The notes under the pieces are model-generated. The model did not search any database and was not told where the DNA came from. It saw only the letters and a list, made by a program, of their open reading frames with translations. Below are positions 415 through 19,946 of a stretch of DNA of 64,000 nt, in pieces; the first letter of the stretch is position 1; every line of letters starts with the position of its first letter. The DNA lies in IMG/VR virus record IMGVR_UViG_3300032050_000004, positions 1 through 64,000 of that record. The stretch is one strand, 5' to 3'. Made by a program: the position numbers and the translations under genes.

Positions 415-430
415 AGTGTTTATTTTTTTT

Positions 431-841: not shown

Positions 842-862
842 ATTTGTTTTTTGTTTTTTTTA

Positions 863-1336: not shown

Positions 1337-1435
1337 AAAAATGTAAATTAGTTTTTGAATATCGTATATCTCTTTGGGATTTGACCCCAGTTTTCCCCGG
1401 GATCGCCTGCGGGAAACATCTTGGATACAGCGGGA
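1337..1435. repeat. Phased intergenic element copy A (right half-site plus arm)
   Basis: ATGTAA 1341, N16, CGTATATCT ending 1371; CAG/CGG/CTG at 1388, 1398, 1407, 1428. Confidence 0.85.
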
Positions 1436-1436
1436 T

Positions 1437-1470
1437 AAAAAAAAAGGGCTCGGAAACCCGAACCCTTTTT
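1437..1470. terminator. Bidirectional intrinsic terminator
   Basis: A-run, GGGCTCGG/CCGAACCC hairpin, T-run. Confidence 0.8.
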
Positions 1471-1841
1471 CATTTAATTTTCTTAATCTAAACACACATT
1501 GTTGTTTTTACAAACTTCCTTGTTTTAAGGAAATTACGAATAATTGTAATTTTAGAGGTAAGTCCATTCACCTTTCGATGATTTCTGACACTCTCCATCA
1601 TTTCTTCGTGTATTCGCAAATTAGCATTGTCATAGTTCGCAGTTTTTAAGTTACTTCCAAACATTGACTTAATAATAATTTCGTTTTGTTCGTCTATGCT
1701 TCTTTTCATTTTAATTATTTTAGTTTGTTTCAATACGGATTTTATTAGAAAAGGTTGAACGAAAATAATAAAATTTTATAATTTATTATAATTTTATTTT
1801 AATTAAATCTAAATCATCTCATTATCAAACTATTTAATTAA

Positions 1842-1935
1842 GAAATGTAAATTACTTTTTTCAATTCGTATATCTGATCGAAAATAACCCCCTGTTTTCA
1901 CCAGACACGGGCTTCTGAGTTCCAGAAACGGGTAG
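1842..1935. repeat. Phased intergenic element copy B (right half plus arm)
   Basis: ATGTAA 1845, N16, CGTATATCT ending 1875; CTG 1892, CAG 1902, CAG 1923; terminator at 1941-1973. Confidence 0.85.
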
Positions 1936-1993
1936 AAAACAAAAAACCCCCAACTTTTCAGTTGAGGGTTTTGTATTCACCTTTGATAAATTA

Positions 1994-2878
1994 CTAATAC
2001 TTTATTTTTTCAGTAATAGGTTTAATGTATTCATACAATTCATACTTAACACATAAGTTTACTAATTTGCCTTTTACCGAATAAAACTTTTCTTCATCTT
2101 CACAATTTTCAAATATACTTTCTAAAAAAGTATCCCTTCTTGTTTCATCAGTAATAATATCTGCAACATCTTCTTCTAATTCATTATCCCATTCTTCGTT
2201 TGAATAATAAGATAAACTCCAACCCAAATGTTCACTCATATCACCATCACTTTTTATACTTAAAGCAAATTTAGTTGCTTCGTAACCATTAGGTAAATAT
2301 TCTTTGACCAAATTACCATTGTCAAATACATAAATCCCACAATTATTTCCAATATCCTCATCAGCAAACTTCACTTCAAATAATAAATCAGGATATAATT
2401 CTGCAAGTTTATGAATGACTGGAAAAGGAGTTGACCACGCAGTATCGAATGAAATTGAATTTTCGCTTATTTGATAGTTGTCATAAGAATTCCATTTAGT
2501 TCCCCAATTAGCAATACTCCAACCATACCAATTAGCGTGTCCATATTTTTCAATGTTATCTAATGATATTTTTGCTTCCTCAAAATCTTGGGGAGAAAGC
2601 CTTTCATTTAAAAGTTGCTTTACACCCTCAACATCAGTAATGCCTTGTTCTTTAATCCAACTCCACTCCAACATTTCAGTAAATCTTTGAGTGTTATTTA
2701 TCAAAATACATATAGCATTATCAACATTACTTCCTGATGTAACCCTCAACGAAGGTGGCATAGGGAGAATTTTGTCAAAGTCAATTAAATTTTCATCTTC
2801 TTTTATGAAATCTAAAACTTCTTTTACCCTTTGCTCACTTCCTTTAATTGTGAGGATATTTGTAATGTGATTAGGCAT
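1994..2878 (-). CDS. DUF1281 / YubB (Api92-like) ferredoxin-like fold protein
   Basis: MPNHITN.L.I.G start, WYGWSIANWGTKWN and FDTAWSTP signatures. Confidence 0.8.
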   Translation of the reverse strand: MPNHITNILTIKGSEQRVKEVLDFIKEDENLIDFDKILPMPPSLRVTSGSNVDNAICILINNTQRFTEMLEWSWIKEQGITDVEGVKQLLNERLSPQDFEEAKISLDNIEKYGHANWYGWSIANWGTKWNSYDNYQISENSISFDTAWSTPFPVIHKLAELYPDLLFEVKFADEDIGNNCGIYVFDNGNLVKEYLPNGYEATKFALSIKSDGDMSEHLGWSLSYYSNEEWDNELEEDVADIITDETRRDTFLESIFENCEDEEKFYSVKGKLVNLCVKYELYEYIKPITEKIKY

Positions 2879-3916
2879 AATTTATTCTATTTTTTAATTA
2901 AAATTATTATTCTTCACTCTCTCCTACACCTACATCAATATAATCTATAACTTCCATACCATCCATTTTGGGGAGAAACAACTCCTCATCAGTATATTTA
3001 TCTTCCTTACGGAAACAAACCACAACTGAACCATCAACATCATCCAAATCAAATTTTGTATCATCAAATTCAATTAATGCTACAATAGTAACTACTGCTC
3101 GTTTAAGTGCCATAATTATTATTTTTTTTTAATCAATACGTTTATATTGAAAAAAGGTTTAAAATCTAATGAATAACCTTGAAATGCTCGTCATCAGTTA
3201 GGTGAACCCAACGAAATTCCATATTGTTATTTGACGCTATTCTCAATCCCAGCCAAACACCCGTTTTATTTTCAAAAAAAACCCGTTCCGTTATTGCTTC
3301 AACCACCCATTTCTCTTCTTTATGAATTGTCTTTTCTTTTGCAATTTCTGATATTGGTTCGAGTTTTACTTTATCACCTGTTCTTATATCTAACATAATT
3401 ATTTATTCTATTATCATTACGGATAAAATATAGAAAGGTCTAAAATAAAATTAATTATCTTTATTTTCAATAATTGAAACCATTTCTTTTAAATGATTTT
3501 CCAAATTGATAAGTTCATTTCTTATGTTTTGAATTTCCTCTAATGCTTTATCATATTTTCTGTTTGAGGTGAAAATGACTATTCTATCGCATTGAACTGG
3601 TATTGTCTTATTTGAAAGAACAATGATGTTTTGTTTAAGCTGATTGCTTCTTGTCATTTTATGTTGAGTTTGGTTTTTGTTTGTTCGATTATTTTTAAGC
3701 AAAAATCCTTCGCACTTTGTGGTGAACCATCAACAAACTCACAAGAGAAAGTATGATAATTAACTTCACTCACATAAACCTCATAAACAATAAATGAAAA
3801 TTTTAACTTCTCTATTTTAAGTGTACCATAATGCAATCTTGAATATCCGTTGAATTTTGACTTATCAAAATTGTCAAATTCAATTTTATAATTATCCATT
3901 TTATAGATTTTGTGTT

Positions 3917-4363
3917 TTACAATTTAGCAAGAAGAACATCCTCGTACTTGTAGTGTTTAGTCCCTTGTGTTTCCAAGAAATCAATCCTGTTCTTGAACCT
4001 TTTATTCATTGTATCCACAATAGTATAAACCCCACTCTTATGTCCTGCACCACTAATATACACCTTATCCCCATAATTGAAAACTCCTCCCCATCTTTTG
4101 AGCAAATCCCTTGAAACTGCAATCCATTTATGTTCCGACGCTTTATTTGGATTGATTTTGTACATACCAGCAGTTACCAAAGGGTCTTCATCACATTGAT
4201 TTACCACAGCATTATACATAGTTGCAGTTACCTTTACTGAATTTTGACTCTTAATTAAATCCTCTAATTGGTTAAGACGCTCATCATTTTCTTGTTGAAC
4301 GACCAACATATAAGTTGTATTTATAGCACTCAATACCATAAGGATATATACGGCTTTTTTCAT
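3917..4363 (-). CDS. 3D-domain (MltA-like) peptidoglycan hydrolase with N-terminal membrane anchor
   Basis: VTATMY, IAVSRDLL, YGDKV and VDTMNKRFKNRIDFL (three-Asp motif); hydrophobic N-terminus. Confidence 0.8.
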   Translation of the reverse strand: MKKAVYILMVLSAINTTYMLVVQQENDERLNQLEDLIKSQNSVKVTATMYNAVVNQCDEDPLVTAGMYKINPNKASEHKWIAVSRDLLKRWGGVFNYGDKVYISGAGHKSGVYTIVDTMNKRFKNRIDFLETQGTKHYKYEDVLLAKL

Positions 4364-4416
4364 AGTGGTTGGTTTTTAATCAATACTGATAAAAAACAAA
4401 AAGGTTTAAGAAAATA

Positions 4417-4525
4417 AAAATGTAAATTATCTTTTTAGGATCGTATATCTTGTCTGGAATTTGACACCTAGGGCCAGCAGTCCCGTCCAGTCAATTTCAG
4501 GATTCCACCAGAGAAAATCAGGACA
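4417..4525. repeat. Phased intergenic element copy C (right half plus arm)
   Basis: ATGTAA 4420, N16, CGTATATCT ending 4450; CAG at 4478, 4488, 4498, 4509, 4519; terminator at 4525-4561. Confidence 0.85.
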
Positions 4526-5513
4526 AAAAAAAAGAGAGCCAATTTCTTGACTCTCCTTTTTGAGATACGCAATGTTTTTCAATTCAAGTAATCAAACCCA
4601 AAGTGAATAAATCCCATTTCAATTAAATCATCATCAGACATCTTTTTAGGGTTTCTCCAAAAGTTAGGTTCTTGTTTATTCTCATCCTCTATAAGTTCAC
4701 TAATCCTTTTCAAAGCACCTTCATAGGTGAATTTCTTATCACCATCCGTTCTTTCAGTTTCAATAAACTCATATTTAATTCTCATATTAATCCATGTTTT
4801 GTTTAGCAAATTCAATCAATTTTTTAGCAAGTTCATCATCCAATTCATCCGTTACATCTTCATTATCCTCATCACGAATTTCAATTTCTTTGACAAAATA
4901 ACTATCGTAATCATCGTTGATAGTTACATGATAACAAGTATCCTCAACTTCAATTTCAAACTTGTGTGTTCTATTGATTACCTTGCTTATCAGTTCCATT
5001 GTTTATACAATTTTATAGTTTGTAATTTCTTCATCACTTATTTGGTCAAAAACATAATCTTTATCCAAACCCCTTACCGAAACCGAATCCACAATTTCTC
5101 CTTGTTTGTTAACCCAAATCTGAATATAAAAAGGTTCAGTATACCAAAGGTTGTTTTTTGCAACAGCACTCCAAGTTGTTTTGTGATGGTCAAATTCCTT
5201 TTTGCTAATGTTCATAGTGTTTGGTTTTTTTAATCAATACGAATAAAAAATAGAAAGGTTTAATTTTTTAGATTATTTTTTAATATATTTGTCATAAAAA
5301 ATTCCAAATCTGCCCAAAGTAGTTTTTCAGGAATCAAATTTGTATCTACACAACTCTTTTCATGTTTTGAATACATATATTCTATGAAATCACTCCAACA
5401 TGATTTGCAAACATTTCCAATAGATTGATAAGTGTTATTACAATTTTTGTTTTCACACCCTATTCTTGAACATTTGTTAAAATCCATATTAATACCAATT
5501 AGGATAGAAAAGG

Positions 5514-5858
5514 TTACTCCTCTTTTGCTTTTTTAAATTTATATTTTTTAATTGTGGTTCTTCCTAAACCAAATTTTTCCATTGTTTTTTTAACAGTGTT
5601 AGTTTTTGTGAACTCATAAATTTGTTCTTTGACCTTTTCAGATACGAACTCTACTTTCATTCCAGTATCAGTCAAATTTTCATTTTGACAATGATAATTA
5701 ATAGTTGATTTTGAACACTTCAATTTTTTTTGAATATCACGATAAGAATAACCTTCGTTTCTTAATTTTAAAATATCTTCTTTAATTCCCCTTCTACCAT
5801 TTTCGTGCAATCGGTCTTTATTGGAATTGTTAATTACAATTACGTGTTTAGTTGCCAT
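5514..5858 (-). CDS. Helix-turn-helix DNA-binding protein
   Basis: ILKLRNEGYSYRDIQKKLKCSKSTINYH is a classic HTH; a second HTH-like segment lies near the C-terminus. Confidence 0.7.
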   Translation of the reverse strand: MATKHVIVINNSNKDRLHENGRRGIKEDILKLRNEGYSYRDIQKKLKCSKSTINYHCQNENLTDTGMKVEFVSEKVKEQIYEFTKTNTVKKTMEKFGLGRTTIKKYKFKKAKEE

Positions 5859-5909
5859 ATTTTGTTTTTTAATTTAAATTAATGTCTAAAATATAAATTA
5901 AGGTTACAA

Positions 5910-6125
5910 TTAAGATTGTAAAAATCTTTTGTCCTTAACAAACTTCAAATGTCTTGCTTCATCCTTTGTCAAACCCACGAACTCACTTGGGGAGAATGAA
6001 ATCTCATCGGGGTAATAGTCAAAGAGATATTCTTCCACCCCATTTTCCAAAGTAACGTGAACTTGGGGCATAGGGTCAAATAAACTTTTAGGCATTGCCG
6101 TAATTCGTGCTGAAATTATTTTCAT
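5910..6125 (-). CDS. Conserved small phage protein
   Basis: LFDPMPQV...LFDYYPDEISF..SEFVGLT pattern; clean ORF behind a class-1 promoter. Confidence 0.55.
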   Translation of the reverse strand: MKIISARITAMPKSLFDPMPQVHVTLENGVEEYLFDYYPDEISFSPSEFVGLTKDEARHLKFVKDKRFLQS

Positions 6126-6467
6126 AGTTATCTTGTTTTTTAATCAATACGTTTTTAGGGAGAAAAGGTTTAAGATTTATAAATTATAAATGAGTAAAAC
6201 TCCCACAACCCATACATTGAATATAAGGTTTACCGCTATCTTTTATGGTAGGACTTTCCTTTGGTAAGATTATCCATTCAGTACCTTTGCAATCGTAACA
6301 CTCGCAATTAGGTAATCTCTCATCAAGGGTAAGCTGGTTAGCTATTCTTTCAGGATATACTGATTTTAACACATCAGCTTCAGGAATTTCTACTAATACC
6401 GATTGATAGAACTTTGACATAATTGATTTTTTAATCAATACGAATCAAAGTAAAAAAGGTTTAATTT

Positions 6468-6731
6468 TTAATTTAAAATTATTTGAAAAAATTGAAATCT
6501 TTCCGACTTAAATGCTTTTATATTATCGGTAGGATTTATTTCATCACCATTTCTATCAACTATGGTAACTGCCATTTCGTTGGTATTTAAGGAATCGGTG
6601 ATATACTTTAACTTATAAACTCTGTTCTTTTGGATCCACCTATCAGGTGTGAATTTTGGTAATGAATCATCTATACAAAATGCGAAAACATTAACGAAAG
6701 AAGCTGGTGCTATTAAATCTGCCATACCCAT
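6468..6731 (-). CDS. Hypothetical protein with late-type TATTTAT upstream
   Basis: ORF track; ATAAATA on + at 6741-6747; divergent from the DUF5856-like gene. Confidence 0.5.
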   Translation of the reverse strand: MGMADLIAPASFVNVFAFCIDDSLPKFTPDRWIQKNRVYKLKYITDSLNTNEMAVTIVDRNGDEINPTDNIKAFKSERFQFFQIILN

Positions 6732-6785
6732 ATGTTTATTATAAATAGTTTTTTTTTCGGTCTATTTATAATAAAATTAAAAAAA

Positions 6786-7157
6786 ATGCACCACAAAAGC
6801 GTAATAAAAATAATGAATTTTCAGCAACAAATGAGAATTCTTCATTGGCAAACCACTTCTTTTGCTCGTCATAATGCCTATGGTGGCATATATGATAGCA
6901 TAGATGATTTATTAGATAGATTTGCTGAAATTTGTATGGGTAAATACGGAAGAATTGAGCTTAATGATGAAATTTCTGAGCTTAAACTTAAAAACATGAA
7001 AGACCTTTCCATAAATTCTTATTTAAATGATTTTTGTGAATTTCTTGTTGAATTAACCGGTGAATTTGACGATGAAAAAGATACTGATGTGTTAAATATC
7101 AGAGATGAAGTTCTTGCTGAAGTAAATAAATTAAAGTATTTACTTACTCTTAAATAA
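6786..7157 (+). CDS. DUF5856 ferritin/Dps-like four-helix protein
   Basis: LHWQTTSFARHNAYGGIYDSIDDLLDRFAEICMGKYGR and C-terminal LNIRDEVLAEVNKLKYLLTLK; TATTTAT at 6763; terminator at 7177-7206. Confidence 0.75.
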   Translation: MHHKSVIKIMNFQQQMRILHWQTTSFARHNAYGGIYDSIDDLLDRFAEICMGKYGRIELNDEISELKLKNMKDLSINSYLNDFCEFLVELTGEFDDEKDTDVLNIRDEVLAEVNKLKYLLTLK

Positions 7158-7587
7158 TACACTATGATTTAAGCTGAAAGGGGAGGAAGTTTTTCCTCCC
7201 TTTTTCATTTTTATATTTTTAATATGATACTATAACCCTTTCAAGTTTTTCTACAACCATACAATTACCAACTTTTTCTGCTTTCATTTTTGCAATCCTT
7301 AATGCTCTTTCATAAGTCATTTTTGCACCGTCAACTTTAATAGTGTCAATTACATCTCTGCGAGTAGTCATTACTGTTTTGACAAGTCGAATTATTTGTA
7401 TCGCTTCACAAACAACTGAAATGTCATTAATAGTTTCATTTTTTGAAACTGCAATCTCTGTAGTTTCCAATTTAGAGCCGAATAAATCAAACGAGTTTTC
7501 CATTTTTTCCTTTTTTTAATCAATACGCTTTTTAATTAAAAAGGTTTAAGCTGAATCGAACTGACTAAACCTAAACTTTTCAAATTT

Positions 7588-7730
7588 AGTTATACGAAAG
7601 AAAAAAGATATTTTACACTTTATAAAAATGTAAATTAGTTTTTTAAGATCGTATATCTGATTATAAATATCCACCAGTTTTCACCGTCGACTGCCAGAAA
7701 TTTCACCGTAAACCAAAATACCGAGTTTGG
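7588..7730. repeat. Phased intergenic element copy D (both halves, 9-bp spacer)
   Basis: TACG 7593, N16, TTACAC 7613; ATGTAA 7628, N16, CGTATATCT ending 7658; CAG 7675, CCG 7684, CAG 7695, CCG 7706. Confidence 0.85.
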
Positions 7731-7824
7731 CACATTTTTACTTCCGAAAATGTCTTGTAAAAGATTAACATAAAAAAGAAAAAGCCGCATCTCTGCGGCT
7801 TTATCAATATAATCATTCCTTTGA

Positions 7825-8418
7825 TTACACAATCTTTATTTTACGATTATCAATGTAAATGAATTTTACATTATCAATCCCCACATTGAAAGTTCCAAAT
7901 GCCTCATCACCTCTAATTCCCAAATTGTAACTTCCTTTTGTAGATTTAATCAAAAATGTTTTTAATTGCTCTAATTGAAATTCAGTCGCCTTAACTCCAT
8001 CAACATAATACTCCGTAAAAGTACTCTCGTTTGAATTAGGATTAGTATAAACCCTCAAATACTTAATTGCAGGATTATCTTTCTTTACAGCAATAACATA
8101 GTTATCTCTGCCGTCAGATGATTCCACATAAGTTGATTCAGGTTTATATTCACCCTCAATACCCTTTTGCTCCCTTTGATTGTTACCTTTAGTAGAAGCA
8201 CTTGTATTGCAACCAAAACCCCACTTTGAAACTTTACGAACTCTACCAATAAAAGGATTACCCCTTTTATTCATTTTAGGTTCAGTGTCCGAAACCATAC
8301 TTCCATAAGTATGACTACCACCACGAACATTTTCCATAAAGGAAATAAATTCATCTTTACTCATTACTTCGTGAGAAATCTGATTGCAGATTTGCTCCAT
8401 TCTTTGTTCTTTGGTCAT
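7825..8418 (-). CDS. Conserved phage hypothetical protein
   Basis: 197-aa ORF containing TEPKMNKRGNPFIGRVRK...NNQREQKG; class-1 promoter at 8443. Confidence 0.6.
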   Translation of the reverse strand: MTKEQRMEQICNQISHEVMSKDEFISFMENVRGGSHTYGSMVSDTEPKMNKRGNPFIGRVRKVSKWGFGCNTSASTKGNNQREQKGIEGEYKPESTYVESSDGRDNYVIAVKKDNPAIKYLRVYTNPNSNESTFTEYYVDGVKATEFQLEQLKTFLIKSTKGSYNLGIRGDEAFGTFNVGIDNVKFIYIDNRKIKIV

Positions 8419-8561
8419 TTTGCGATTTTTTTTAGGTTAATATCAATACGGATTTTTTTGTAAAAGGTTTAATAAAACCCCCACATATATAATACGCAGT
8501 AACACCACCAAATCTTTAGTGTAAAATTAAAATATTTTTTAACTTATTGAAAATCAGTATA

Positions 8562-8593
8562 AAAGAAAAAGTCCCGGACTTCGGGACTTTTTT
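8562..8593. terminator. Bidirectional intrinsic terminator
   Basis: AAAAAGTCCCG-GACTT-CGGGACTTTTTT. Confidence 0.8.
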
Positions 8594-8989
8594 CTAACCA
8601 CTATGAAACACAATAAACAATTATAGAACCGAAACAAATATACACAAATTACTTATTCTTAACACTATAACTGTAAGATGAAAAAATAGTCCTATTGACA
8701 AATTCTTTTGTGCTTTCGCTAAATTCAAAACATTTCAATCCGTGAAGAATATTTTTTTCTCCAATACAATCCACTTCTTTCATAAGAAAGGTAATGAATT
8801 TCTCATACACAATATCTTCTCTCATATTATATCTTTTGCTGATGTGAGCAGAAACCTTTTTTAGAGTTGGATGCTTTGTAACATAATCCTCAATCACTTT
8901 TCTTTGGGTAATCATATTGAGTTTAGTTTTAGTTTTACTTACAATACGGATAATTAAAAAAAAGGTTTAAGAAATTATTTTACAGTTAA

Positions 8990-9203
8990 ATCCTGAAGAA
9001 CAGTAAAAAACTGGATAATTTAATTTTTAGATATACGATTGTTAAAAGTTATTTTACATATTAGGAGCAATTCATTTTACATATTAGGAGCAATTCATTT
9101 TACATATTGTAAAATGTAAATTAGTTTTTTCTTTTCGTATATCTGATCGAAAATGTGCCTGCTGTTCGAGCTGGAGCATCGCCTCAAGTTCAGGAATTAC
9201 AGC
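8990..9203. repeat. Phased intergenic element copy E (both halves; spacer contains a 23-bp tandem duplication)
   Basis: AGATATACGA 9029; TTTTACATATTAGGAGCAATTCA at 9052-9074 and 9075-9097 plus a partial third copy; TCGTATATCT 9135-9144; terminator at 9204-9233. Confidence 0.85.
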
Positions 9204-9257
9204 AAAAAAAAATCCCCGCTGATTTGCGGGGATTCTCAATTCTATAACAATGATATA

Positions 9258-9557: not shown

Positions 9558-9568
9558 TTTTACTATAT

Positions 9569-11546: not shown

Positions 11547-11588
11547 AGTTTTATCTTTTTAATCAATACGTTTTTTAATTCAAAAGGT

Positions 11589-12044: not shown

Positions 12045-12121
12045 AATAGGTGGTTTATACATTCAATACGGATAAAATAAAAAAAGGTTTAAGACCACCA
12101 CAAAACTATTTTCAAAAATTT

Positions 12122-12275
12122 AGATATACGAATATGAATATTTAAATTACATTATCAAAAATGTAAATTAGTTTTTTTAATTCGTATATCTTGTTTGGGA
12201 TTTGACCCCTGTAAACGCCAGATCCGGGCTAGGAAACAGGTTCTAGCGGGAGAGATTGGAAATTATGCGGGAGAG
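12122..12275. repeat. Phased intergenic element copy F (both halves, 8-bp spacer)
   Basis: AGATATACGA 12122, TTACAT 12147, ATGTAA 12161, TCGTATATCT 12182-12191; CTG 12209, CAG 12219, CTAG 12229. Confidence 0.85.
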
Positions 12276-12541
12276 ATAAAAACAAAAAACCCACAACTTC
12301 CGTTGCGGGTTTCAAGCGGGGGAGAATCTCAACCCCTATTATTTAAAGTATTTCTCTGTCTTTCATACTTTTTCCATCAGTTTTATTTGAAATTCCACTT
12401 TCTTCATTAATTCTCTTTGACAATCATCACACCTTTCCCTAAAAAACAATTTGAGATTAGGTTTATTATTATCACAATGTTTGCAAGGTTTCTTCCAAGC
12501 CTTGTCAAAGGCATTATCAGTAATCATACCTTTCATATCCT

Positions 12542-12754
12542 TTATTTTTCTTTTTCGTAACCAATTCCTTTGAAATTATAGTTTCCATTCTTTATTTCAG
12601 CAATATCAGCATCTAATGCTTGCTTATAATCGTCCCTTTTCTTTTCTGCATCCTTACAACTCATACAAATTACATCCTCGTTATACATTGACATAATTGT
12701 AACTCCATTTGTTGATTGGTGACATCGGTCACAATTTTCTCGGTACATTGACAT
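12542..12754 (-). CDS. Small Cys-rich (CxxC...CxxC) conserved protein
   Basis: CDRC...IMSMYNEDVICMSCK...GNYNFKGIG. Confidence 0.6.
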   Translation of the reverse strand: MSMYRENCDRCHQSTNGVTIMSMYNEDVICMSCKDAEKKRDDYKQALDADIAEIKNGNYNFKGIGYEKEK

Positions 12755-13290
12755 AGGTTTTGTTTTTTTTATTTATCAATAAATTCTAAACTTTTATAAG
12801 CAATATCCAATACTGCACCATTATCAAATCTTACTGCTACAAATGTATCCCAACTACCCCACATACCTACTTTATAATTTGGTATAGTTTTTCCACTTGA
12901 ACCCTCAATACATCTTGAATCATACCTTGTCAAATCAACTTTAAGTTTCACTTTTTTGGGTTTACCGCCTATTTGCATATTTCTTCTTTTTTGGTTATGC
13001 TATCAATACGAATAAAATTAAAAAAGGTTTAATTAAAAAACACAAATCATTAAAAAAACAATCGCAGCCAAAATTTGCATTCTATTCAATCCTTTTGAAA
13101 CTCCCTCTCTGCTCATAAAACTTGTCTGAACAATCATAACCAATGCTGAAACTGAAATTATCTTGTCAATCAATAAACACTCATCCCAAGGATGTTTTCC
13201 GAAATACAAAATAGAGAAACAATAAGCAAAATATCCTATGATTGAAAGATGAACTCTGAATGTTCTGAATTGAAGGTTTGTAATCATATC

Positions 13291-13731
13291 TTATGAATTA
13301 GAATTGCTCTTGTAAAATATATTGTATTGAATAGGTAGTCCTTGTGTTGAATTACACACATTCACAGTAGCAATAGAATCGTTTATATTGTAAGTAGAGA
13401 TAAATGGGTGTTCAAATAGATTGCCCGAAACTCTTTTTATTCCACCCTCAAAATAATAATTGAAAGTAAGATTTATTGAATTATCCTCATTTTTGAAATA
13501 CACACAATTCCCAAGTGTTCTTTCTTGATAATCTACATAATCCACAATTCTGTTAATCTTGTAAGGTTTGATATTATGTAGTTCATAATTTTGACCTTGA
13601 TAATTTACTTTGAAAAATAGATTAAAATCCAAATTATCTGAACCATAAACTCTTTCAGGACTGGTCAAAGGTTCTTTCTCGCAAGACGAACAAAGAAAGA
13701 CAATAGATAGAATTATTAGTAGGTTTTTCAT
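13291..13731 (-). CDS. Bacteroidota-type lipoprotein
   Basis: Lipobox MKNLLIILSIVFLCSSC-EKE. Confidence 0.7.
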   Translation of the reverse strand: MKNLLIILSIVFLCSSCEKEPLTSPERVYGSDNLDFNLFFKVNYQGQNYELHNIKPYKINRIVDYVDYQERTLGNCVYFKNEDNSINLTFNYYFEGGIKRVSGNLFEHPFISTYNINDSIATVNVCNSTQGLPIQYNIFYKSNSNS

Positions 13732-13778
13732 AGTGGTTATTTTTTAATCAATACTGATTTTTATTAAAAAGGTTTAAT

Positions 13779-14057
13779 TTAATCCCACTTTCTTACCATA
13801 TAAACATACGATGTATCAATATCCTCCAATTTGAAATTGGGGTTAGTCCTTCTTTGATTATCTACAACTTTCAAATCCATAGTATAGCACCAATCTTTTC
13901 TTTCTTGCTCACTCAATTCGTGTCCTACAAAGAATGAACTGCTCGCATAACCGAACTTTGACTTATCCAAAGTGTAGCAATGATTGTAAACATAATCTTC
14001 CTTTGTGCAAGATGAAAGAGTAAAAATTACTCCGATGATGATGATAAGTTTTTTCAT
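13779..14057 (-). CDS. Bacteroidota-type lipoprotein
   Basis: MKKLIIIIGVIFTLSSC-TKED; class-1 promoter at 14075. Confidence 0.7.
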   Translation of the reverse strand: MKKLIIIIGVIFTLSSCTKEDYVYNHCYTLDKSKFGYASSSFFVGHELSEQERKDWCYTMDLKVVDNQRRTNPNFKLEDIDTSYVYMVRKWD

Positions 14058-14464
14058 AGTGGTTGGTTTTTTAATCAATACGTATTTTATTAGAAAAGGT
14101 TTAAAATAAATATGATTAAATATCATATCTACTTATGTCAAATCCATAACCCATCTCACTACAAATTTTATTTACCCTTGAACAAATATGATATTCAGGT
14201 TCAGTATCATTTACCTCACTATGTTTCTCTGAAATCTTTTTCATACCCTCTGAAATCATTTGTATAACCTCTTCTTTTGTTACACGATACTTTCCTTTTA
14301 CTTTCTTTTCAATCTTCACAACAAGCGAATGACACATCTTATCACCCGATTTTGTAAACATTTCATAACTTGGGATTGATTGTTTGGTTGTGGTTTCCAT
14401 TGTGTTTAGGTTTTTCTATCAGTACGGATTGGGGAGAAAAAGGTTTAATTTACATAGATAATTT

Positions 14465-14662
14465 TCCACCAGTCGTCACCCTGAACTCACCAGTCATCCA
14501 CAGGGAGAGAATTAAAAACAGATATACGATCTTTAAAAGTTATTTTACATTTTTAGGGGAGAGATAAAAATGTAATTTAGTTTTTTCTATTCGTATATCT
14601 CTTGTGGAAATTACCACTGCTGTGGAATCAGGTGAATCGCCGCACGAGGCAGGATTAACAGC
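14465..14662. repeat. Phased intergenic element copy G (both halves, 19-bp spacer, two arms)
   Basis: CWG at 14470, 14481, 14491, 14501; AGATATACGA 14520; TCGTATATCT 14591-14600; CNG at 14620, 14629, 14640, 14650, 14659; terminator at 14663-14694. Confidence 0.9.
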
Positions 14663-14890
14663 AAAAAAAAAGACCGAACTTTCGTTCAGTCTTTGTCAAA
14701 CACCATTGGTGCCATTCCTATTGTTGTCGGGTAATCATCTTATTCATATTTGTAGTCCCCTTCGAATTTAAAACCCGAACTGAACCACCATAAAGATAGT
14801 CTTAATGACCAATACATATTCCTTCCGTGCATCCTTCCATTTACATAGCATTCGTATGCTTTCTTGATTCGATAACGATTTATTTTCATA

Positions 14891-15067
14891 TTAATTTTCC
14901 TCCTCCAATAATTGTTTAATTGATTCGATACATAAACTCATTTCGTGTTGAGGTGAACCCCCTTCTTCTATTTCACTTTGACATAATTCTACTAATCCAA
15001 TAACCTCATCTTTAAGGTTTGGGTGTTCGCTAATAAATTGCTTTGCAAATTGAATTACTTCTTTCAT
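14891..15067 (-). CDS. Small hypothetical protein (58 aa, not in the track)
   Basis: MKEVIQFAKQFISEHPNLKDEVIGLVELCQSEIEEGGSPQHE...; class-1 promoter at 15084. Confidence 0.6.
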   Translation of the reverse strand: MKEVIQFAKQFISEHPNLKDEVIGLVELCQSEIEEGGSPQHEMSLCIESIKQLLEEEN

Positions 15068-15481
15068 AGGTTTTATTTTTTAATCAATACGGAAATAAAT
15101 TAAAAAGGTTTAATTATTAAATAAAAAAAGGGTTCGGTAACCAGCCGAACCCCTAACCATAAAAAACCACCTATGAACCACGAACTTTCTTTATTTCCTT
15201 GCCTTTTCTATCAATACTAATTTAATTTGAAAAGGTTTATTTTTTTTTATTTTTTTTATACTTGCTTTTCTAATAATTATATTTTATTTTAGTTAAAGAT
15301 TAAGCATTACTATTATTGTTTGCTTTAGTCATAGTGTTTTGTTTTGTCCGTAGCCCGTTTAGTCACGGGCTATGGTTTTTTTAGAAGGTGTTGATTGTGT
15401 GAATGAATGAACAAATCATAAATCCACCCAACACCATAACCACAAGCAACTCAATGGTGTATTTAATTTTATTTTCCATTT

Positions 15482-15676
15482 TCAATAGAAATTATAACAT
15501 CCATAACTTTTTACACTTTTGTTCCTCGAATACTTCTTAACATTTGAAGATGAATGTTTTTGAGTTTTTTGTTTGAATTTAGTTATGCTTGAATACGCAG
15601 CACATTGCTCTGTTGAACTACAAGAACTCAAAAACCAAACCGAAATAATTGCCGTTACAATAATTAATTTTTTCAT
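15482..15676 (-). CDS. Small lipoprotein with SC....C.AY motif and basic tail
   Basis: MKKLIIVTAIISVWFLSSCSSTEQCAAY. Confidence 0.65.
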   Translation of the reverse strand: MKKLIIVTAIISVWFLSSCSSTEQCAAYSSITKFKQKTQKHSSSNVKKYSRNKSVKSYGCYNFY

Positions 15677-16191
15677 ATATATAAAGTTTTTAGTTTTCAA
15701 ACAAATAAAACATACCAAAATTGTGTATCCCAACAATGCTTACAACCACATTTCCTTTATTGTCTTTGGGAGCATTCTCAACCATAAATTGAACTGCCCT
15801 CATTTCAGCAATCTTTTGAATAAACTCTTTTAGAGAATTGCTAATTTCGTTATTTTCGTTTTCTTCTTTCATAGTTTTAGGTTTTTAATCAATACGGAAA
15901 TAAATTAAAAAGGTTTATTAGAATCGTAAACTAATTTCATATAGAAATCGCTCACTTCATCCATATCATCAGATTGAAATACTACATTATACCAATCTGA
16001 CCGATATTCACCACCCGAAGTCATAAACATTTTATTATCTTCTTTATTAAGATAAATTACAAATTTCTTTTCAGTATTTGATAGAGGAGGATTTGGGTTA
16101 AATTCTTGTTCTTTGGTCTTTTTCATAGTTCTTGGTTCTTACAATCAATACTTATATTATTAGAAAAGGTTTGAATTAAATTGAAATTTTT

Positions 16192-16430
16192 CTCCCTGAT
16201 AAACATCCTGATTTTTACTGGATCAATCCTGAGAACTGGCGTTTTACAGGGGAGAGTTTTATAAAAGATATACGATATTAAATTTCTAATTTACATTTTT
16301 AGGGGAGAGATAAAAATGTATTTTACTTTTTTTAATTCGTATATCTTGTTTGGAATTTTTCCGCCTTCCAGCTCGAGTTCAGGCTGAGGAGAGGCTCAAG
16401 CGGGAGAAGTCAAAGTTCAGCGGGGGAGAA
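16192..16430. repeat. Phased intergenic element copy H (both halves, 19-bp spacer identical to copy G)
   Basis: CWG at 16196, 16208, 16218, 16229, 16247; AGATATACGA 16266; TCGTATATCT 16337-16346. Confidence 0.9.
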
Positions 16431-16725
16431 TAAAAACGAAAACCCCCACCTCTTGCGAAGCGGGGGTCTTATTTTATTTAGCGGGGGGAGTGCCATATAA
16501 GGCGAGTTCCATTTTCCCCTATCGAAGTGCCGTTGGGTCAATTCGGCTTGTCTATATCGGCTCGGATTTTAATGCCCTGCCTATCGGGAACCCTTTTAGT
16601 TTCTATATATTTTATAAAGATAATTATTAAGATTTAATTTCGGGGGGACTCTTGTTCATCTATATTCGGATTAAGCAATGTTTTGATTTTTTTTATCATA
16701 TAGGGTTATTTTGAATTTACTATCG

Positions 16726-16905
16726 CTAATATCGAAGTTTCGCACGTTTCATTCCTTTCGCAGCAGCCACACTTGGTCGATGCTTGTGATTGTTATATTT
16801 ATGTTTTCCCACATCACGATACGCCCAACAAGTTTCAGTAGATGCACAAGAAGTCATTGTAAGACCATATCCGATAATCATTACAGCAAGAAGGAGTTTT
16901 TTCAT
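16726..16905 (-). CDS. Small lipoprotein (59 aa, not in the track), paralogue-like to 15482-15676
   Basis: MKKLLLAVMIIGYGLTMTSCASTETCWAYRDVGKHK...; class-1 promoter at 16931. Confidence 0.65.
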   Translation of the reverse strand: MKKLLLAVMIIGYGLTMTSCASTETCWAYRDVGKHKYNNHKHRPSVAAAKGMKRAKLRY

Positions 16906-16976
16906 AGTGTTTGTTTTTTTTGTTATACTATCAATACTTTTTTAATTTAGAAAGGTTTAAGATATTTCAATTTTAT

Positions 16977-17246
16977 TTACAAATAATCACTTCCGTTATT
17001 GAGTGTTGTTTTACTTTTAATGAACTCCATTACTTTGTCAGCATAATAAGATGAAGTCAATTCGTTCAGATAGCTCAAAGTTTTCCAATAAGCATCATAT
17101 TCATTTGTCATAAAATTTCCTCCAACAACTTCCTTTTTACTATTGTAGTCAAGTGCTTTAATTGAAAGTGCATTTCCGTTCAAGTCAACCTTGATAATTC
17201 CTCCAACCGCATATTCTCCAATCTTAAATGATTTTGTTGCTTTCAT
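16977..17246 (-). CDS. Hypothetical phage protein
   Basis: ORF track; class-1 promoter at 17262. Confidence 0.55.
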   Translation of the reverse strand: MKATKSFKIGEYAVGGIIKVDLNGNALSIKALDYNSKKEVVGGNFMTNEYDAYWKTLSYLNELTSSYYADKVMEFIKSKTTLNNGSDYL

Positions 17247-17756
17247 AAGTTTGTTTTTTAATCAATACGATTTAATTAGAAAAAGGTCTAATTTTTATCA
17301 AAGAATTATAAATTAAACCACTAATCATAATTGATATAATCATATCGAACCAAACAAATAAAAACAAATCATCCCTTGTTGGTGTTTGAAATAATAAGAT
17401 ACTCATACAACAAATTGTATTTATTAGTAAAATACCAATCAAGGTTGCACCAATGTAATTTGACAAAGTTCTTTCCATATTTTTTTATTTTTTAGATTAG
17501 ATTAAAAAAGGGATATTGTTAATACCCCTTTTTATGTTTATCCTTTCTTGAATAAGTTTTTTTATCCCGATACACTTTTTCTTTGTGTATGTTATACATA
17601 CCCATTTCAAGCATAATATCTCGATGGATACCCTTATCCACTTTCACTTTTTCCTTTGCAGTATTTACCTTTTTCATTGTGTTTTAGTTTTTGTTGGTTC
17701 ATAGTTACAATCAATACTAATAAATTGTAAATAGGTTTAAGAAAAACAAAAAAAAT

Positions 17757-17890
17757 CCCCCCCAGAAACCAGCCCGTTTTTCTGGCTATGCTATAATATA
17801 GATATACGATATTAAAAAGGTATTTTACATTTTTTGCGTTATGCATTTTGTGTAATAAAATGTATTTTATTTATTTCAATTCGTATATCT
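17757..17890. repeat. Phased intergenic element copy I (29-bp spacer) at the minus-to-plus strand switch
   Basis: AGATATACGA 17800, TTACAT 17825, ATGTAT 17860, TCGTATATCT 17881-17890. Confidence 0.85.
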
Positions 17891-18016
17891 GAAATTTACA
17901 ATATCCAATTTTCAAGCACAAACACCTCAAAATATAATTTCATTTATTTTAATTTACCTTAAACCTTTTCCTATTAAATAAGTATTGATAATATAACCAA
18001 CAAAAAAACTACGAAA

Positions 18017-18664
18017 ATGAAAACCACCAACAAAACACTTAATGAACTTATCGCAAAGATTGTTTCAGTTTATGGATGTGATGAACAACAAGTATTGCGA
18101 CTAATTGAAATTACAACGGATATGTCAAAGGGTGCAAAATTTGCAACAATCAAAGATTATTCATCGGACAAATCTGAACATTCTGAAATTGCAAATCATT
18201 CTATTATCTTAAACTTTTCATATAAAAATATGAAAAAAGATGATAAAGAAACTTTGAGAACTTTTGATGTTAATTTAGTTGATGTAAATAAATTCAATTA
18301 TGATAGTATTGATACAAAAGGTATGGAATTGAGTGCATATAAAAATGAAGTAAGAAATTCACTACAAAATGCACTTTATGAAATAAATAACCCTAAACAA
18401 GTTGAAAGGGTAAATAATGATGATTACTTGAATGATATTTTAGTGTTTAATTGGAATACTGAAAGATTGTCAATAATTGGTCAAGGGGTAAAAAAAGAAA
18501 CAATAGTTGAAGGAGAATATAAAAAAGTAAAGTCAGCACCTTTGACAATAGCAAAAAAGTTGATAATGAAACAAGCAAATTTAAGAGTTGATAAATATCG
18601 TAGGTATGCAATAGACAATTTAAGTATTGTTAATTTGCAAGGGGAAAATTTGGAAATTCAATAA
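18017..18664 (+). CDS. Hypothetical phage protein
   Basis: 215-aa ORF behind a plus-strand class-1 promoter (17959); terminator at 18678-18705. Confidence 0.65.
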   Translation: MKTTNKTLNELIAKIVSVYGCDEQQVLRLIEITTDMSKGAKFATIKDYSSDKSEHSEIANHSIILNFSYKNMKKDDKETLRTFDVNLVDVNKFNYDSIDTKGMELSAYKNEVRNSLQNALYEINNPKQVERVNNDDYLNDILVFNWNTERLSIIGQGVKKETIVEGEYKKVKSAPLTIAKKLIMKQANLRVDKYRRYAIDNLSIVNLQGENLEIQ

Positions 18665-18774
18665 AACAAGGCAAATTAAAAGGGGAAAAAATTTCCCCTT
18701 TTTTTATATTAAATCTTAAACCTTTTTAATTAAAATAAGTATTGATATTGTAACCAACTAAAAAACTAAACACT

Positions 18775-18975
18775 ATGAGCAAGGTAAGATTAAAAAAATT
18801 CGCAGTAAATTTCTACAACAATCTTTTGAAGGAAGAAAAAAGAATAGAAATCGAAGCGTATCGCGAAAAGGAAGCAATCGAAATTGCAACTTTGGAATTG
18901 GACATCAAATGTTCGCATTGGACTGAAGAATTAGCAGAGTATTTTACACTACAAAAGGTTGAATTGGTCAAGTAG
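18775..18975 (+). CDS. Small hypothetical protein
   Basis: Class-1 promoter at 18716; terminator at 18996-19029. Confidence 0.55.
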   Translation: MSKVRLKKFAVNFYNNLLKEEKRIEIEAYREKEAIEIATLELDIKCSHWTEELAEYFTLQKVELVK

Positions 18976-19030
18976 GTTTGATAGGTTAAACTTGAAAAGG
19001 GGTTGAACGAAAGTTCGCCCCTTTTTTTTG

Positions 19031-19240
19031 TATCCTGAAATTTCCCGTCAAATCCCTGAACCCGACGGTAAAAAAACAGGTACGATAAAAAACAGATATA
19101 CGATATTAAATTTCTTATTTACATTTTTATAAGGGGTTTGAAAATGTATTTTACTTTTTTTTAATCGTATATCTTATTTGGAAATTTCTCGATCAACTGC
19201 CGGTTCCGGGCTGGAAAATTTCAGGATTGAACCCTGAGAA
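19031..19240. repeat. Phased intergenic element copy J (both halves, 19-bp spacer)
   Basis: CNG at 19035, 19045, 19056, 19066, 19077; AGATATACGA 19094; TCGTATATCT 19165-19174. Confidence 0.9.
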
Positions 19241-19397
19241 ATTTTTTTTCAAAAGATGATAAAGATTGGGATAGAAAATACGTATTACTATTATAAGGGG
19301 TTAATGAAAAATAAATTTTCATACCCACCAAAGATTTGGTTAGGTAAATACGTATTACTATTAGAAGAAGTCAAACAATATAAAACTCAAAAACAAA

Positions 19398-19793
19398 ATG
19401 AAAACAAATGTAGAACAACTTGTAAAGTTTGAAAATGAAACAATGAAATCATTAAATGAATTACGACCTATTGTATTTGACCTTTTTGGTAAAGGTGTAT
19501 TGGGGGTAAAAATGTTTCAAGATGAAAATTACCTTCAAATAACCAATTACACTTGGGGTAGTGAAGAATACATTGAGAAGTTGAATAAACTTGTAACTCA
19601 TTATGAATTTGCCAAAACTTTTTGGTACAATAATTTTAATGTACAAGAAGCAATAGACAAGTATAATCATTATTGTTGTGGTGTACTTATGAGAGAAGCA
19701 GAGAAGAAAAGAATTTTAACCTATGTTTATTTTATTTGGATGCTAAATATGGTAAGTGGAGAATTAAGGAATATCATTGTTTCAAGCAATTAA
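19398..19793 (+). CDS. Hypothetical phage protein
   Basis: ORF track; tandem variant promoters AAAGATT...AAATACGTATTACTATT at 19261 and 19330; terminator at 19814-19843. Confidence 0.55.
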   Translation: MKTNVEQLVKFENETMKSLNELRPIVFDLFGKGVLGVKMFQDENYLQITNYTWGSEEYIEKLNKLVTHYEFAKTFWYNNFNVQEAIDKYNHYCCGVLMREAEKKRILTYVYFIWMLNMVSGELRNIIVSSN

Positions 19794-19845
19794 ATGGAGT
19801 TTGGTAATTTGACAAAGGGGTTGAGAAATCAATCCCTTTTTTTAT

Positions 19846-19940
19846 TCCTGCTGTCCTCCTGTATCCGCCGCAGGTTACTGGCTGTTTACAGTAGGTATTT
19901 ATAAACAGATATACGAATACTAATTACTTATTTACATTTT
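19846..19940. repeat. Phased intergenic element copy K (left half plus arm only)
   Basis: CWG-rich arm 19848-19891; AGATATACGA 19907; TTTACATTTT 19931. Confidence 0.8.
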
Positions 19941-19946
19941 GTCTAA

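What the first reader, a model, noticed from the sequence alone, without database searches (positions are those of the whole stretch)
1388..19891. GC-rich arms carry CWG/CNG triplets every 10-11 bp, phased to the core
Seen: the arms are not alignable, yet CAG/CTG/CCG recur with helical period. C: 4478, 4488, 4498, 4509, 4519. G left: 14470, 14481, 14491, 14501. J left: 19035, 19045, 19056, 19066, 19077. D: 7675, 7684, 7695, 7706. F: 12209, 12219, 12229. The first triplet lies 15-18 bp outside the TATCT end in nearly all copies. Inference: the signal is read on one face of double-stranded DNA, by an oligomeric protein array or by wrapping as in Mu strong-gyrase-site arms, rather than as RNA structure. 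Alternatives are clustered primase start sites (E. coli DnaG uses 5'-CTG-3') or methylation/restriction decoy sites on first-injected DNA.
Basis: partly seen in the sequence, partly recalled or inferred. Interest (0 to 1): 0.82.

Follow-up and report, generated by a model that had tools for sequence, protein, structure and literature searches.

The report
Helically phased CWG lattice beside phage cores
In the early-gene region of a freshwater jumbo phage, about twenty conserved promoter-like boxes are each followed by about 60 bp in which almost only a C-N-G word once per DNA helical turn is kept, which looks like a docking or wrapping track on DNA rather than a folded RNA.

Summary
Beside each conserved core (AAAAATGTAAATTA-N11-TCGTATATCT; 18 copies in window 1341-19937) the next 55-70 bp carry CAG/CTG/CCG/CGG at +16/17, +27, +37, +47, +58 from the core end. 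The period is 10.2-10.6, it is phase-locked to the core, and it far exceeds shuffles. It holds in 109 distinct arms from related metagenomic phages. CTG and CAG are the two most over-represented trinucleotides, equally frequent, and interchangeable at the same lattice points.

No conserved RNA fold was found. MFE z is -0.7 on both strands, RNAalifold gives 0 pairs on 54 arms, there is no arm-specific covariation, and Rfam and tRNA scans are empty.

The gyrase (Mu SGS) analogy fits the geometry poorly. The primase and restriction-decoy alternatives get no support: CWG is not depleted genome-wide, and CCWGG is absent everywhere, arms included.

The elements sit at the borders of early gene cassettes, just behind the previous cassette's terminator, as PeSLs do in T4-like phages. 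The closest mechanistic analogue is the P2 Cox box array. Transcription of the arms could not be tested.

The parts
1341..1436 (+). Element A: core 1341-1371 (ATGTA..TCGTATATCT), arm 1372-1436, then A9 and a terminator hairpin
1845..1940 (+). Element B: core 1845-1875, arm 1876-1940; CWG at +17, +27, +40, +48
4420..4524 (+). Element C: core 4420-4450, arm 4451-4524; CAG at 4478, 4488, 4498, 4509, 4519; best phased stretch of the window
7550..7618 (-). Element D-left: degenerate core (TCGTATAACT) 7588-7618, short arm 7550-7587 that runs into a class-1 promoter box
7628..7710 (+). Element D-right: core 7628-7658, lattice part of the arm 7659-7710
8971..9059 (-). Element E-left: core 9029-9059, arm 8971-9028 (CWG at +16, +26, +34, +44), then a class-1 box
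9114..9203 (+). Element E-right: core 9114-9144, arm 9145-9203, then A9 and terminator 9208-9237
12086..12152 (-). Element F-left: core 12122-12152, 36-nt arm without any CNG (an exception)
12161..12283 (+). Element F-right: core 12161-12191, arm 12192-12283 with two GCGGGAGAG units 21-22 nt apart, terminator 12286-12313
14449..14550 (-). Element G-left: core 14520-14550, arm 14449-14519 (CWG at +17, +27, +37, +48), then a class-1 box and gene 14116-14400
14570..14662 (+). Element G-right: core 14570-14600, arm 14601-14662, terminator 14669-14694
16191..16296 (-). Element H-left: core 16266-16296, arm 16191-16265 (CWG at +17, +28, +35, +46, +56, +68)
16316..16436 (+). Element H-right: core 16316-16346, arm 16347-16436, terminator 16439-16470
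17756..17830 (-). Element I-left: core 17800-17830, short arm 17756-17799
17860..17958 (+). Element I-right: core 17860-17890, A/T-rich arm without lattice (an exception), runs into the class-1 box at 17962
19030..19124 (-). Element J-left: core 19094-19124, arm 19030-19093 (CNG at 19077, 19066, 19056, 19045, 19035)
19144..19241 (+). Element J-right: core 19144-19174, arm 19175-19241, which ends in its own hairpin plus T-run
19844..19937 (-). Element K: core 19907-19937, arm 19844-19906, terminator 19814-19839

Best explanation
Each element has two parts. The first is a conserved bipartite core, about 45 bp long. It is probably a phage-specific promoter and in any case a sequence-specific nucleation site. 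The second is 55-70 bp of DNA on one fixed side of the core. In that stretch selection keeps only a lattice of C-N-G words, mostly CCWG near the core and CWGG further out, once per helical turn, with A/T-rich half turns between them.

I read the lattice as a signal on double-stranded DNA. It would be a track of five or six weak boxes on one face, and at the same time anisotropically bendable DNA. An oligomeric protein nucleated at the core would line up on it or wrap it, in the way P2 Cox or lambda Xis filaments and ParR arrays use boxes spaced 10-11 bp next to promoters.

The elements sit at the borders of early gene cassettes. They lie directly behind the terminator of the upstream cassette and, in paired copies, in front of the next cassette's promoter. 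The nucleoprotein complex would there gate firing from the core and/or block read-through between cassettes.

Shown: the lattice, its period, its phase lock to the core, its restriction to these elements, the lack of a shared RNA fold, and the position at cassette borders. Inferred: that a protein reads it, which protein, and the regulatory outcome.
For: - Period 10.2-10.6, above all shuffles and coherent with the core.
- CTG (2.8x) and CAG (2.3x) are the most over-represented trinucleotides. Counts are 173 and 167, and they peak at the same positions, as expected for a word that reads the same on both strands.
- Information content beyond +20 is near zero except at lattice positions.
- Arms are swapped between strains while core and terminator stay.
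- The lattice is present both in arms that end at terminators and in arms that run into promoters.
- The top six phased stretches of the window are all arms.
- No RNA fold: z -0.68 on both strands, no column covariation forming helices, site-1 type does not predict downstream complement (p 0.30), RNAalifold gives 0 pairs, Rfam empty.
- The terminators next to the arms have their long U-run on the strand of the convergent protein gene, not of the arm.
- Analogue: P2 Cox protects at least 70 bp through six or more boxes 10-11 bp apart, in either orientation, next to promoters (PMC3936717).
Against: - No binding protein was identified. Pfam on about 40 window ORFs found no Cox/Xis/RHH family. The only HTH protein (5514-5858) is missing in some strains.
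- The recognised word is only 3-4 bp, far shorter than known boxes.
- There is strand asymmetry. C is more periodic than G, and CCWG dominates at site 1 while CWGG dominates at sites 4-6. This could also mean a single-strand or RNA reading.
- The Fourier peaks cannot exclude 11 nt for G+C.
- Arm lengths are not quantised in helical turns.
- No local dyad symmetry.
- Whether the arms are transcribed is unknown. The only holder runs are probably DNA.
Confidence: 0.4

Rival explanations
1. The arms are transcribed from the core, either as ~100-nt small RNAs that stop at the adjacent hairpin or as leaders of the next cassette. The periodic C-N-G or YC words are then read on unfolded RNA by a multimeric RNA-binding protein. 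One candidate is a hexameric Rho-like ring that takes one pyrimidine-C per subunit roughly every 10 nt; another is a phage RNA-binding oligomer. The effect would be to trap, terminate or titrate that factor.
For: - The core has a -35/-10-like layout (TGTAAA-N17-TATATC) at fixed spacing in both orientations. Minus-strand copies point into genes.
- 70 of 109 arms end at an A-run plus GC hairpin, and body length is tightly set at 63-67 nt, about six lattice points.
- On the sense strand C is the most periodic base. The base before the lattice C is a pyrimidine in 57-71%. The first half of the arm is C 31% against G 23%.
- TCAGGA occurs 8 times in the window arms, always in sense orientation.
Against: - CTG and CAG are interchangeable at the same positions.
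- The second half of the arms has G above C.
- The hairpins are better terminators for the opposite strand.
- The sigma-70-type scan does not call the cores, and the host phylum uses other promoter motifs.
- No transcript evidence exists.
- An RNA-level reader has less reason to keep the phase relative to the DNA core, although the 5' end of the RNA would be set by it.
Confidence: 0.27
2. No dedicated protein reads the lattice. Phased A/T tracts and flexible CWG steps make intrinsically curved or anisotropically flexible DNA. Such DNA would absorb or pin supercoils between convergent and divergent early transcription units, or tune the neighbouring promoter, as helically phased A-tracts do at many bacterial and phage promoters.
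For: - A/T and G+C alternate with a 10.4-10.6 period.
- AAATTT outnumbers TTTAAA 16 to 3 in the arms.
- The rough wedge model gives more bend than shuffles in 84% of arms.
- Phased A-tracts coupled to promoters are documented (PMC9825172).
Against: - The predicted bend is modest: 34 degrees per 60 bp, against 27 for random genome pieces.
- The specific over-representation of CWG above every other G+C-rich triplet, including GNC types, is more than a composition wave.
- The conserved CC at +15/+16 is likewise more than a composition wave.
Confidence: 0.15
3. The lattice has no present function. It is the remnant of a common ancestor built from 10-21-nt tandem units, kept in register by a low indel rate and by gene conversion among the ~20 paralogous copies.
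For: - Several arms contain two or three tandem ~21-nt units, for example 12236-12283 and 4485-4524.
- Identity autocorrelation peaks at 10-12, 21 and 31 nt.
- Arms are exchanged between loci and strains.
Against: - Non-lattice positions have decayed to background while lattice positions have not.
- The pattern holds across 109 distinct arms from many strains and several related phages.
- The triplets themselves are 2.3-2.8x over expectation.
Confidence: 0.08
4. The triplets are clustered primase start sites (CTG-type), or methylation or restriction decoy sites.
For: CTG and CAG are strongly enriched in the arms. The genome clearly evolves under restriction pressure: CCWGG is 0 against 34.5 expected and GCGC is 0 against 10.3.
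Against: - Neither idea predicts a helical period or a phase lock to the core.
- CWG is at expectation elsewhere in the genome (O/E 0.98 and 1.09).
- The arms contain CCWG and CWGG but never the avoided CCWGG, so they offer no cognate site to that system.
- The primase specificity of the unknown host or phage is not known.
Confidence: 0.03

Closest known systems
P2 Cox / lambda Xis box arrays (winged-helix filaments that wrap DNA next to promoters and att sites)
   Same: Five to six sites with 10-11 bp start-to-start spacing cover about 60-70 bp. The sites occur in either orientation and lie directly beside promoter elements. One protomer per helical turn is the proposed reading (PMC3936717).
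   Different: Cox boxes are 9-bp words (TTAAAG/CNCA). Here only C-N-G plus one flanking C or G is kept. There are about 20 copies per genome in an early region of a lytic-looking jumbo phage, not at an immunity switch or att site. No Cox/Xis-like protein was found in the ORFs scanned.
PeSLs, the composite promoter-terminator motifs of T4-like phages (PMC2839356, PMC4122927)
   Same: These are repeated conserved promoter-like motifs joined to terminator stem-loops. They flank small ORFan genes in a hyperplastic early region and coincide with insertions, deletions and replacements between close relatives.
   Different: PeSLs are about 50-60 bp with no phased arm. Here the core points back towards the terminator, often in back-to-back pairs. 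A second, different promoter box (class 1) sits in front of almost every gene.
DNA gyrase wrapping motif / Mu strong gyrase site
   Same: A G+C/A+T wave of about 10.5 bp flanks a core and is taken as the mark of DNA wrapped on a protein.
   Different: A gyrase site is two-sided within about +/-65 bp of the cleavage point. Here single copies have one arm only, and in pairs the lattice lies about 60-115 bp from the centre. There is a strongly conserved 45-bp A/T-rich core, and there are about 20 copies.
ParR/parC-type and omega-type repeat arrays around a promoter (general knowledge)
   Same: Short repeats at 10-11 bp (or contiguous heptads) flank promoter hexamers and are bound cooperatively by small dimers. 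This gives a superhelical nucleoprotein complex that also represses the promoter.
   Different: Those repeats are alignable iterons of one sequence, and there are one or two loci per replicon. Here the arms are hypervariable and only a 3-4 bp word persists.
CsrB/RsmZ-type protein-sponge RNAs
   Same: Some arms carry two or three (U)UCAGGA(U) words ahead of a terminator.
   Different: CTG is as common as CAG at the lattice. The words are not presented in hairpin loops. No CsrA signature occurs in any DNA held. The likely host phylum (Bacteroidota) is not known to use CsrA (general knowledge).

Membership tests
Gyrase wrap motif / Mu strong gyrase site | Two periodic arms placed symmetrically within about 65 bp of a central cleavage core | tested here: not met
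   Three single copies have one arm only. In pairs the lattice starts about 60 bp from the pair centre.
Gyrase wrap motif / Mu strong gyrase site | Gyrase cleavage at the centre | not testable with these tools
   Needs cleavage mapping with a quinolone.
Cox/Xis-type box array | At least five or six boxes with 10-11 bp start-to-start spacing over about 60-70 bp | tested here: met
   Lattice at +16.5, +27, +37, +47.5, +58 and +68.5; period 10.2-10.6.
Cox/Xis-type box array | Boxes may face either way | tested here: met
   CCWG against CWGG is 59:2 at site 1, about 1:1 at sites 2-3 and 8:35 at site 4. This may partly be forced by the genome-wide ban on CCWGG.
Cox/Xis-type box array | A box of about 9 bp with a recognisable consensus | tested here: not met
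   Only C-N-G plus one flank is conserved.
Cox/Xis-type box array | A small winged-helix (Cox/Xis) protein encoded by the phage | tested here: inconclusive
   None was found among about 40 window ORFs scanned with Pfam, nor in the precomputed Pfam of the early genes. Only 64 of 222 kb was available, and most small ORFs have no family.
PeSL (promoter-early stem-loop cassette) | A repeated conserved promoter motif joined to a terminator stem-loop, in a hyperplastic region of small ORFs | tested here: met
   Cores lie 65-110 bp from terminator hairpins. There are 30 terminator-like sites against 6.8 expected. Small ORFs without families fill the region.
PeSL (promoter-early stem-loop cassette) | Association with indels and replacements between close relatives | tested here: met
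   Cassette 16301-17852 is absent in one strain, and arms are replaced between core and terminator. Breakpoints also occur at nearly every gene border.
PeSL (promoter-early stem-loop cassette) | Near-consensus host promoter that drives the downstream ORF | tested here: inconclusive
   TGTAAA-N17-TATATC is not called by the sigma-70 scan. Most copies point at a terminator, not at an ORF. Promoter activity was not testable.
Small regulatory RNA gene | Conserved secondary structure with covariation | tested here: not met
Small regulatory RNA gene | A transcript with defined ends | not testable with these tools
   The runs that hold the sequence are probably DNA. The true metatranscriptomes hold none of it.
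Small regulatory RNA gene | Match to a described RNA family | tested here: not met
   Rfam at gathering score gives 0 matches. In E-value mode there are only sub-threshold terminator-like matches. No tRNA or tmRNA.
Rho utilisation (rut) site | C-rich, G-poor RNA of about 60-80 nt with spaced YC dimers | tested here: inconclusive
   First half is C 31% and G 23% with a phased YC. Second half is C 16% and G 23%.
Restriction or methylation decoy | The arms carry a site that the rest of the genome avoids | tested here: not met
   CWG O/E is about 1 outside the arms. The avoided CCWGG and GCGC are absent from the arms too.

The most novel reading that the evidence does not exclude
The arms are positioning sequences for a DNA-wrapping oligomer, either a phage early protein or a host nucleoid protein. 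It would be nucleated at the core and would wrap about 60 bp in a left-handed, nucleosome-like path; the 10.2-10.3 bp CWG period and the known liking of histone-type wraps for CTG/CAG point that way. The result would be about twenty positioned nucleoprotein insulators that separate and time the early gene cassettes of a jumbo phage. This would be a promoter-anchored chromatin-like device not described in phages.
Probability: 0.12. Interest if true: 0.85.

Novelty: new variant of a known kind. Interest (0 to 1): 0.6.

Why it matters
If the lattice is a protein track, it would be a compact and highly repeated regulatory device of uncultured freshwater Bacteroidota jumbo phages. A conserved nucleation core would sit next to a sequence-free, phase-only signal. 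That would show how a phage can keep a structural DNA code while letting the sequence drift or recombine freely.

It also gives a clean test bed for how much of protein-DNA recognition can rest on helical phasing of a 3-bp word. About 100 natural variants are available.

Even on the ordinary reading it maps the transcription-unit borders of an unannotated 222-kb phage. It also exposes two restriction specificities (CCWGG and GCGC) of its unknown host.

Tried and rejected
1. The first collection scan used a wrong gap length and returned only chance single hits. It was corrected.
2. Distant relatives found through the DUF1281_C protein (32-45% identity) have no such elements.
3. INPHARED holds no relative at the DNA level.
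4. RNA evidence: the four holder runs are labelled RNA-Seq but behave as DNA of 90-99% similar strains. The true metatranscriptomes hold nothing.
5. Structured sRNA: rejected on z-scores, column covariation, own-versus-swapped pairing (only -6.7 against -6.2 kcal/mol) and RNAalifold.
6. Palindromic 14-bp operators (CCWGAAATTTCWGG): seen in a few arms, but there is no general dyad symmetry at fixed centres.
7. CsrA sponge: no CsrA signature in window or loci, and CTG is as common as CAG.
8. Arm lengths quantised in helical turns: not significant.
9. Breakpoints between relatives specific to the cores: no, they occur at nearly every gene border.
10. Canonical Bacteroidota promoter motif TTTG-N19-21-TAnnTTTG: only 4 matches in the window, none at the cores.
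11. SNP pattern inside near-identical clusters: lattice C/G is less variable (2.0 against 4.1%), but the counts are too few.

Full report
WHAT THE WINDOW IS. The window is about 28% G+C. It is the first 64 kb of a 222-kb viral contig from a freshwater metagenome, IMGVR_UViG_3300032050_000004. Near-identical and 90-95% similar strains occur in many lake samples. A protein with a type IX secretion sorting domain points to a Bacteroidota host. INPHARED holds no DNA relative.

Positions 1-20000 are a dense run of small, mostly minus-strand ORFs without known families. Almost every ORF is preceded by a class-1 box, AACCTTTTT-N10-16-TAYTGA. There are 22 copies, all in this region and all in gene orientation.

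THE ELEMENTS. The finding's core is a second, different box: AAAAATGTAAATTA-N11-TCGTATATCT. TCGTATATCT with at most one mismatch occurs 26 times against 3.6 expected. There are 17 exact copies plus one one-mismatch copy between 1362 and 19916.

Three copies are single and point rightwards. One points leftwards at the right border. Seven pairs stand back to back. Conservation continues for 16 nt past the core (nnTTTrrAATTTnnCC), so the arms are not wholly unalignable.

After 55-70 nt, 70 of 109 distinct arms reach an A6-9 run and a G+C hairpin. Another 28 run into a class-1 box. The commonest arm length is 63-67 nt. The terminator scan calls these hairpins on the strand of the convergent protein gene, whose U-run is the long one.

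Read in the direction of the genes, a cassette border therefore has this order: gene, terminator, arm (antisense), core (antisense), short spacer, then optionally core, arm, class-1 box and next gene.

THE OBSERVATION.

In the window arms, CWG pairs 10-11 nt apart number 20 against 1.3 in dinucleotide shuffles (0 of 1000). Pairs at 20-22 nt number 16 against 1.5.

To gain power I scanned IMG/VR and the JGI metagenomes with the core pattern. This gave 350 elements, which reduce to 109 distinct arms after removing chance loci.

- In the 94 arms of at least 50 nt, base identity autocorrelates at 10-12, 21 and 31 nt.
- The Fourier peak is at 10.2 for CNG and CWG, 10.4 for C and 10.6 for G+C. It is above all shuffles.
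- The peak is as strong when the arms are summed in register with the core, so the phase is locked to the core.
- A CNG lies within 1.5 nt of +16.5, +27, +37, +47.5, +58 and +68.5 in 83, 76, 51, 54, 31 and 22% of arms. At the half-turn points the figure is 24 to 5%.
- The lattice is present in terminator-ending and in promoter-ending arms.
- A scan of the whole 64 kb for phased CWG stretches puts six arms in the top six places.

WHAT THE WORD IS. Against a first-order Markov expectation, CTG (2.8x) and CAG (2.3x) are the two most over-represented trinucleotides in the arms. Their counts are almost equal, 173 and 167. They peak at the same positions.

Site 1 is usually CCCCTG, and sites 4-6 are usually (T)CAGG(A). 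CCWG against CWGG runs 59:2 at site 1, about 1:1 at sites 2-3 and 8:35 at site 4.

CCWGG itself never occurs. This turned out to be genome-wide. The window has 0 against 34.5 expected. About 650 kb of family loci have 0, because all 38 hits lie in unrelated chance loci. GCGC is also 0, against 10.3 expected.

The ban on CCWGG forces each lattice word to be one-sided. This tempers any reading of the orientation flip.

RNA OR DNA. The RNA reading was tested in several ways.

- Minimum free energies of the arm bodies are only slightly below dinucleotide shuffles. Mean z is -0.68 sense and -0.70 antisense, with no strand difference.
- Pairing of the 5' segment with its own 3' part is barely better than with other arms' 3' parts: -6.7 against -6.2 kcal/mol, p 0.008.
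- The site-1 hexamer finds a complement in its own arm about as well as in others: 4.16 against 4.00 nt.
- Whether site 1 is CTG or CAG does not predict the downstream triplets (p 0.30).
- In the ungapped register no stacked column pairs stand out.
- RNAalifold on a MAFFT alignment of 54 arms predicts no pair at all.
- Rfam and ARAGORN find nothing.

The complementarity that exists is generic (C-rich words first, G-rich words later), not arm-specific. That is what a set of boxes predicts and not what a conserved helix predicts.

Beyond +20 the information content is close to zero except at lattice positions. Strains differ by wholesale replacement of the arm between an unchanged core and an unchanged terminator (loose ends at 14663, 16352 and 16358).

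AAATTT outnumbers TTTAAA 16:3.

These results favour a signal on the duplex. The favoured form is one weak contact or one flexible step per turn on one face, anchored at the core.

LIMITS. Nothing here shows a protein.

- Pfam scans of about 40 ORFs and the precomputed domains of the early genes show no Cox/Xis, RHH or histone family. The single HTH protein (5514-5858) is absent from some strains.
- There is strand asymmetry: C is more periodic than G, and pyrimidines precede the lattice C. An unfolded RNA read by a ring-shaped binder is therefore not excluded. The arm length of about 65 nt equals six lattice steps.
- Whether the core fires is unknown. Its TGTAAA-N17-TATATC layout is promoter-like, but the sigma-70 scan does not call it. 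The canonical Bacteroidota motif is not there.
- The only public runs holding the sequence behave as DNA.
- Arm lengths are not quantised in helical turns, and fixed dyad centres are absent.

- The Mu strong-gyrase-site comparison fails on geometry. Arms are one-sided in single copies. In pairs the lattice lies 60-115 bp from the centre.
- Primase start sites do not predict a helical period.
- Restriction or methylation decoys are contradicted. CWG is at expectation outside the arms, and the arms avoid the sites the genome avoids.

COMPARISON WITH KNOWN SYSTEMS. For the layout, the closest described things are the PeSLs of T4-like phages. These are repeated promoter-terminator motifs that flank ORFans in hyperplastic regions and mark indels (PMC2839356, PMC4122927). 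Here too a whole cassette (16301-17852) is present or absent between strains, although breakpoints occur at nearly every gene border.

For the mechanism, the closest is the P2 Cox array: six or more boxes 10-11 bp apart, in either orientation, at least 70 bp protected, beside promoters, on a left-handed filament with six protomers per turn (PMC3936717). The differences are the very short word, the hypervariable arms, the roughly twenty copies and the early-region setting.

VERDICT. The periodic, core-phased CWG lattice is real. It is specific to these elements and conserved across a phage family. It is not explained by an RNA fold.

The best-supported reading is a DNA-level track for an oligomeric or wrapping protein at cassette borders (confidence about 0.4). 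The rivals are an RNA-level periodic binding site (0.27) and protein-free curvature (0.15). I file it as a new variant of known kinds: phased box arrays and PeSL-like border elements.

Noticed in passing
whole window; family loci L012-L019 and L025-L128: CCWGG is completely absent: 0 against 34.5 expected in the window, and 0 in about 650 kb of related phage DNA. GCGC is also absent (0 against 10.3 expected). This is strong restriction avoidance and hints at CCWGG- and GCGC-specific systems in the unknown host.
   Followed up: partly
window 1117-18765, e.g. 14398-14451, 17955-18008: There is a second repeated box, AACCTTTTT-N10-16-TAYTGA, in 22 copies. It lies 15-25 nt before the start codon of nearly every small early ORF and always in gene orientation. 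It is probably the promoter class that actually drives the early genes. It matches neither sigma-70 nor the Bacteroidota consensus.
   Followed up: partly
window 16301-17852: A whole cassette, from core H-right through the genes to core I-left, is missing in one related strain, which joins H-left directly to I-right. In other strains the arm between an unchanged core and an unchanged terminator is replaced by a different arm (loose ends at 14663, 16352 and 16358).
   Followed up: partly
window 14556-14566, 16302-16312, 14503-14511, 14420-14430, 12246-12254, 12267-12275: The word CTCTCCC (GGGAGAG on the other strand) recurs on the gene-sense (minus) strand whatever the orientation of the arm. 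It occurs in the spacers of pairs G and H, at site 1 of minus-strand arms, inside class-1 box spacers, and twice in the F-right arm. No explanation.
   Followed up: no
window 9034-9101: About three tandem copies of a 23-nt unit (CATTTTACATATTAGGAGCAATT) lie between the two cores of pair E. Each copy repeats the TTTTACAT part of the core.
   Followed up: no
window 26018-27442, 38654-39484, 40106-42514, 45774-46895: The phage carries host-like genes: a PAS-domain histidine kinase, a class II aminoacyl-tRNA-synthetase-like protein, an M12B metalloprotease with PKD domains and a type IX secretion sorting tail, and an OmpA-like outer-membrane protein.
   Followed up: no
window 21958-24177: A 739-aa protein has a GIY-YIG nuclease domain and five matches to one PHROG of unknown function. 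Its relatives occur in Vibrio schizoT4-like phages and in a 636-kb uncultured phage.
   Followed up: no
window 4497-4523, 16205-16232, 19032-19058, 19220-19227: (T)TCAGGA(T) occurs eight times in the arms, always in sense orientation, and is about 25 times denser there than elsewhere. It resembles the CsrB repeat, but no CsrA-like gene was found in any held DNA.
   Followed up: partly
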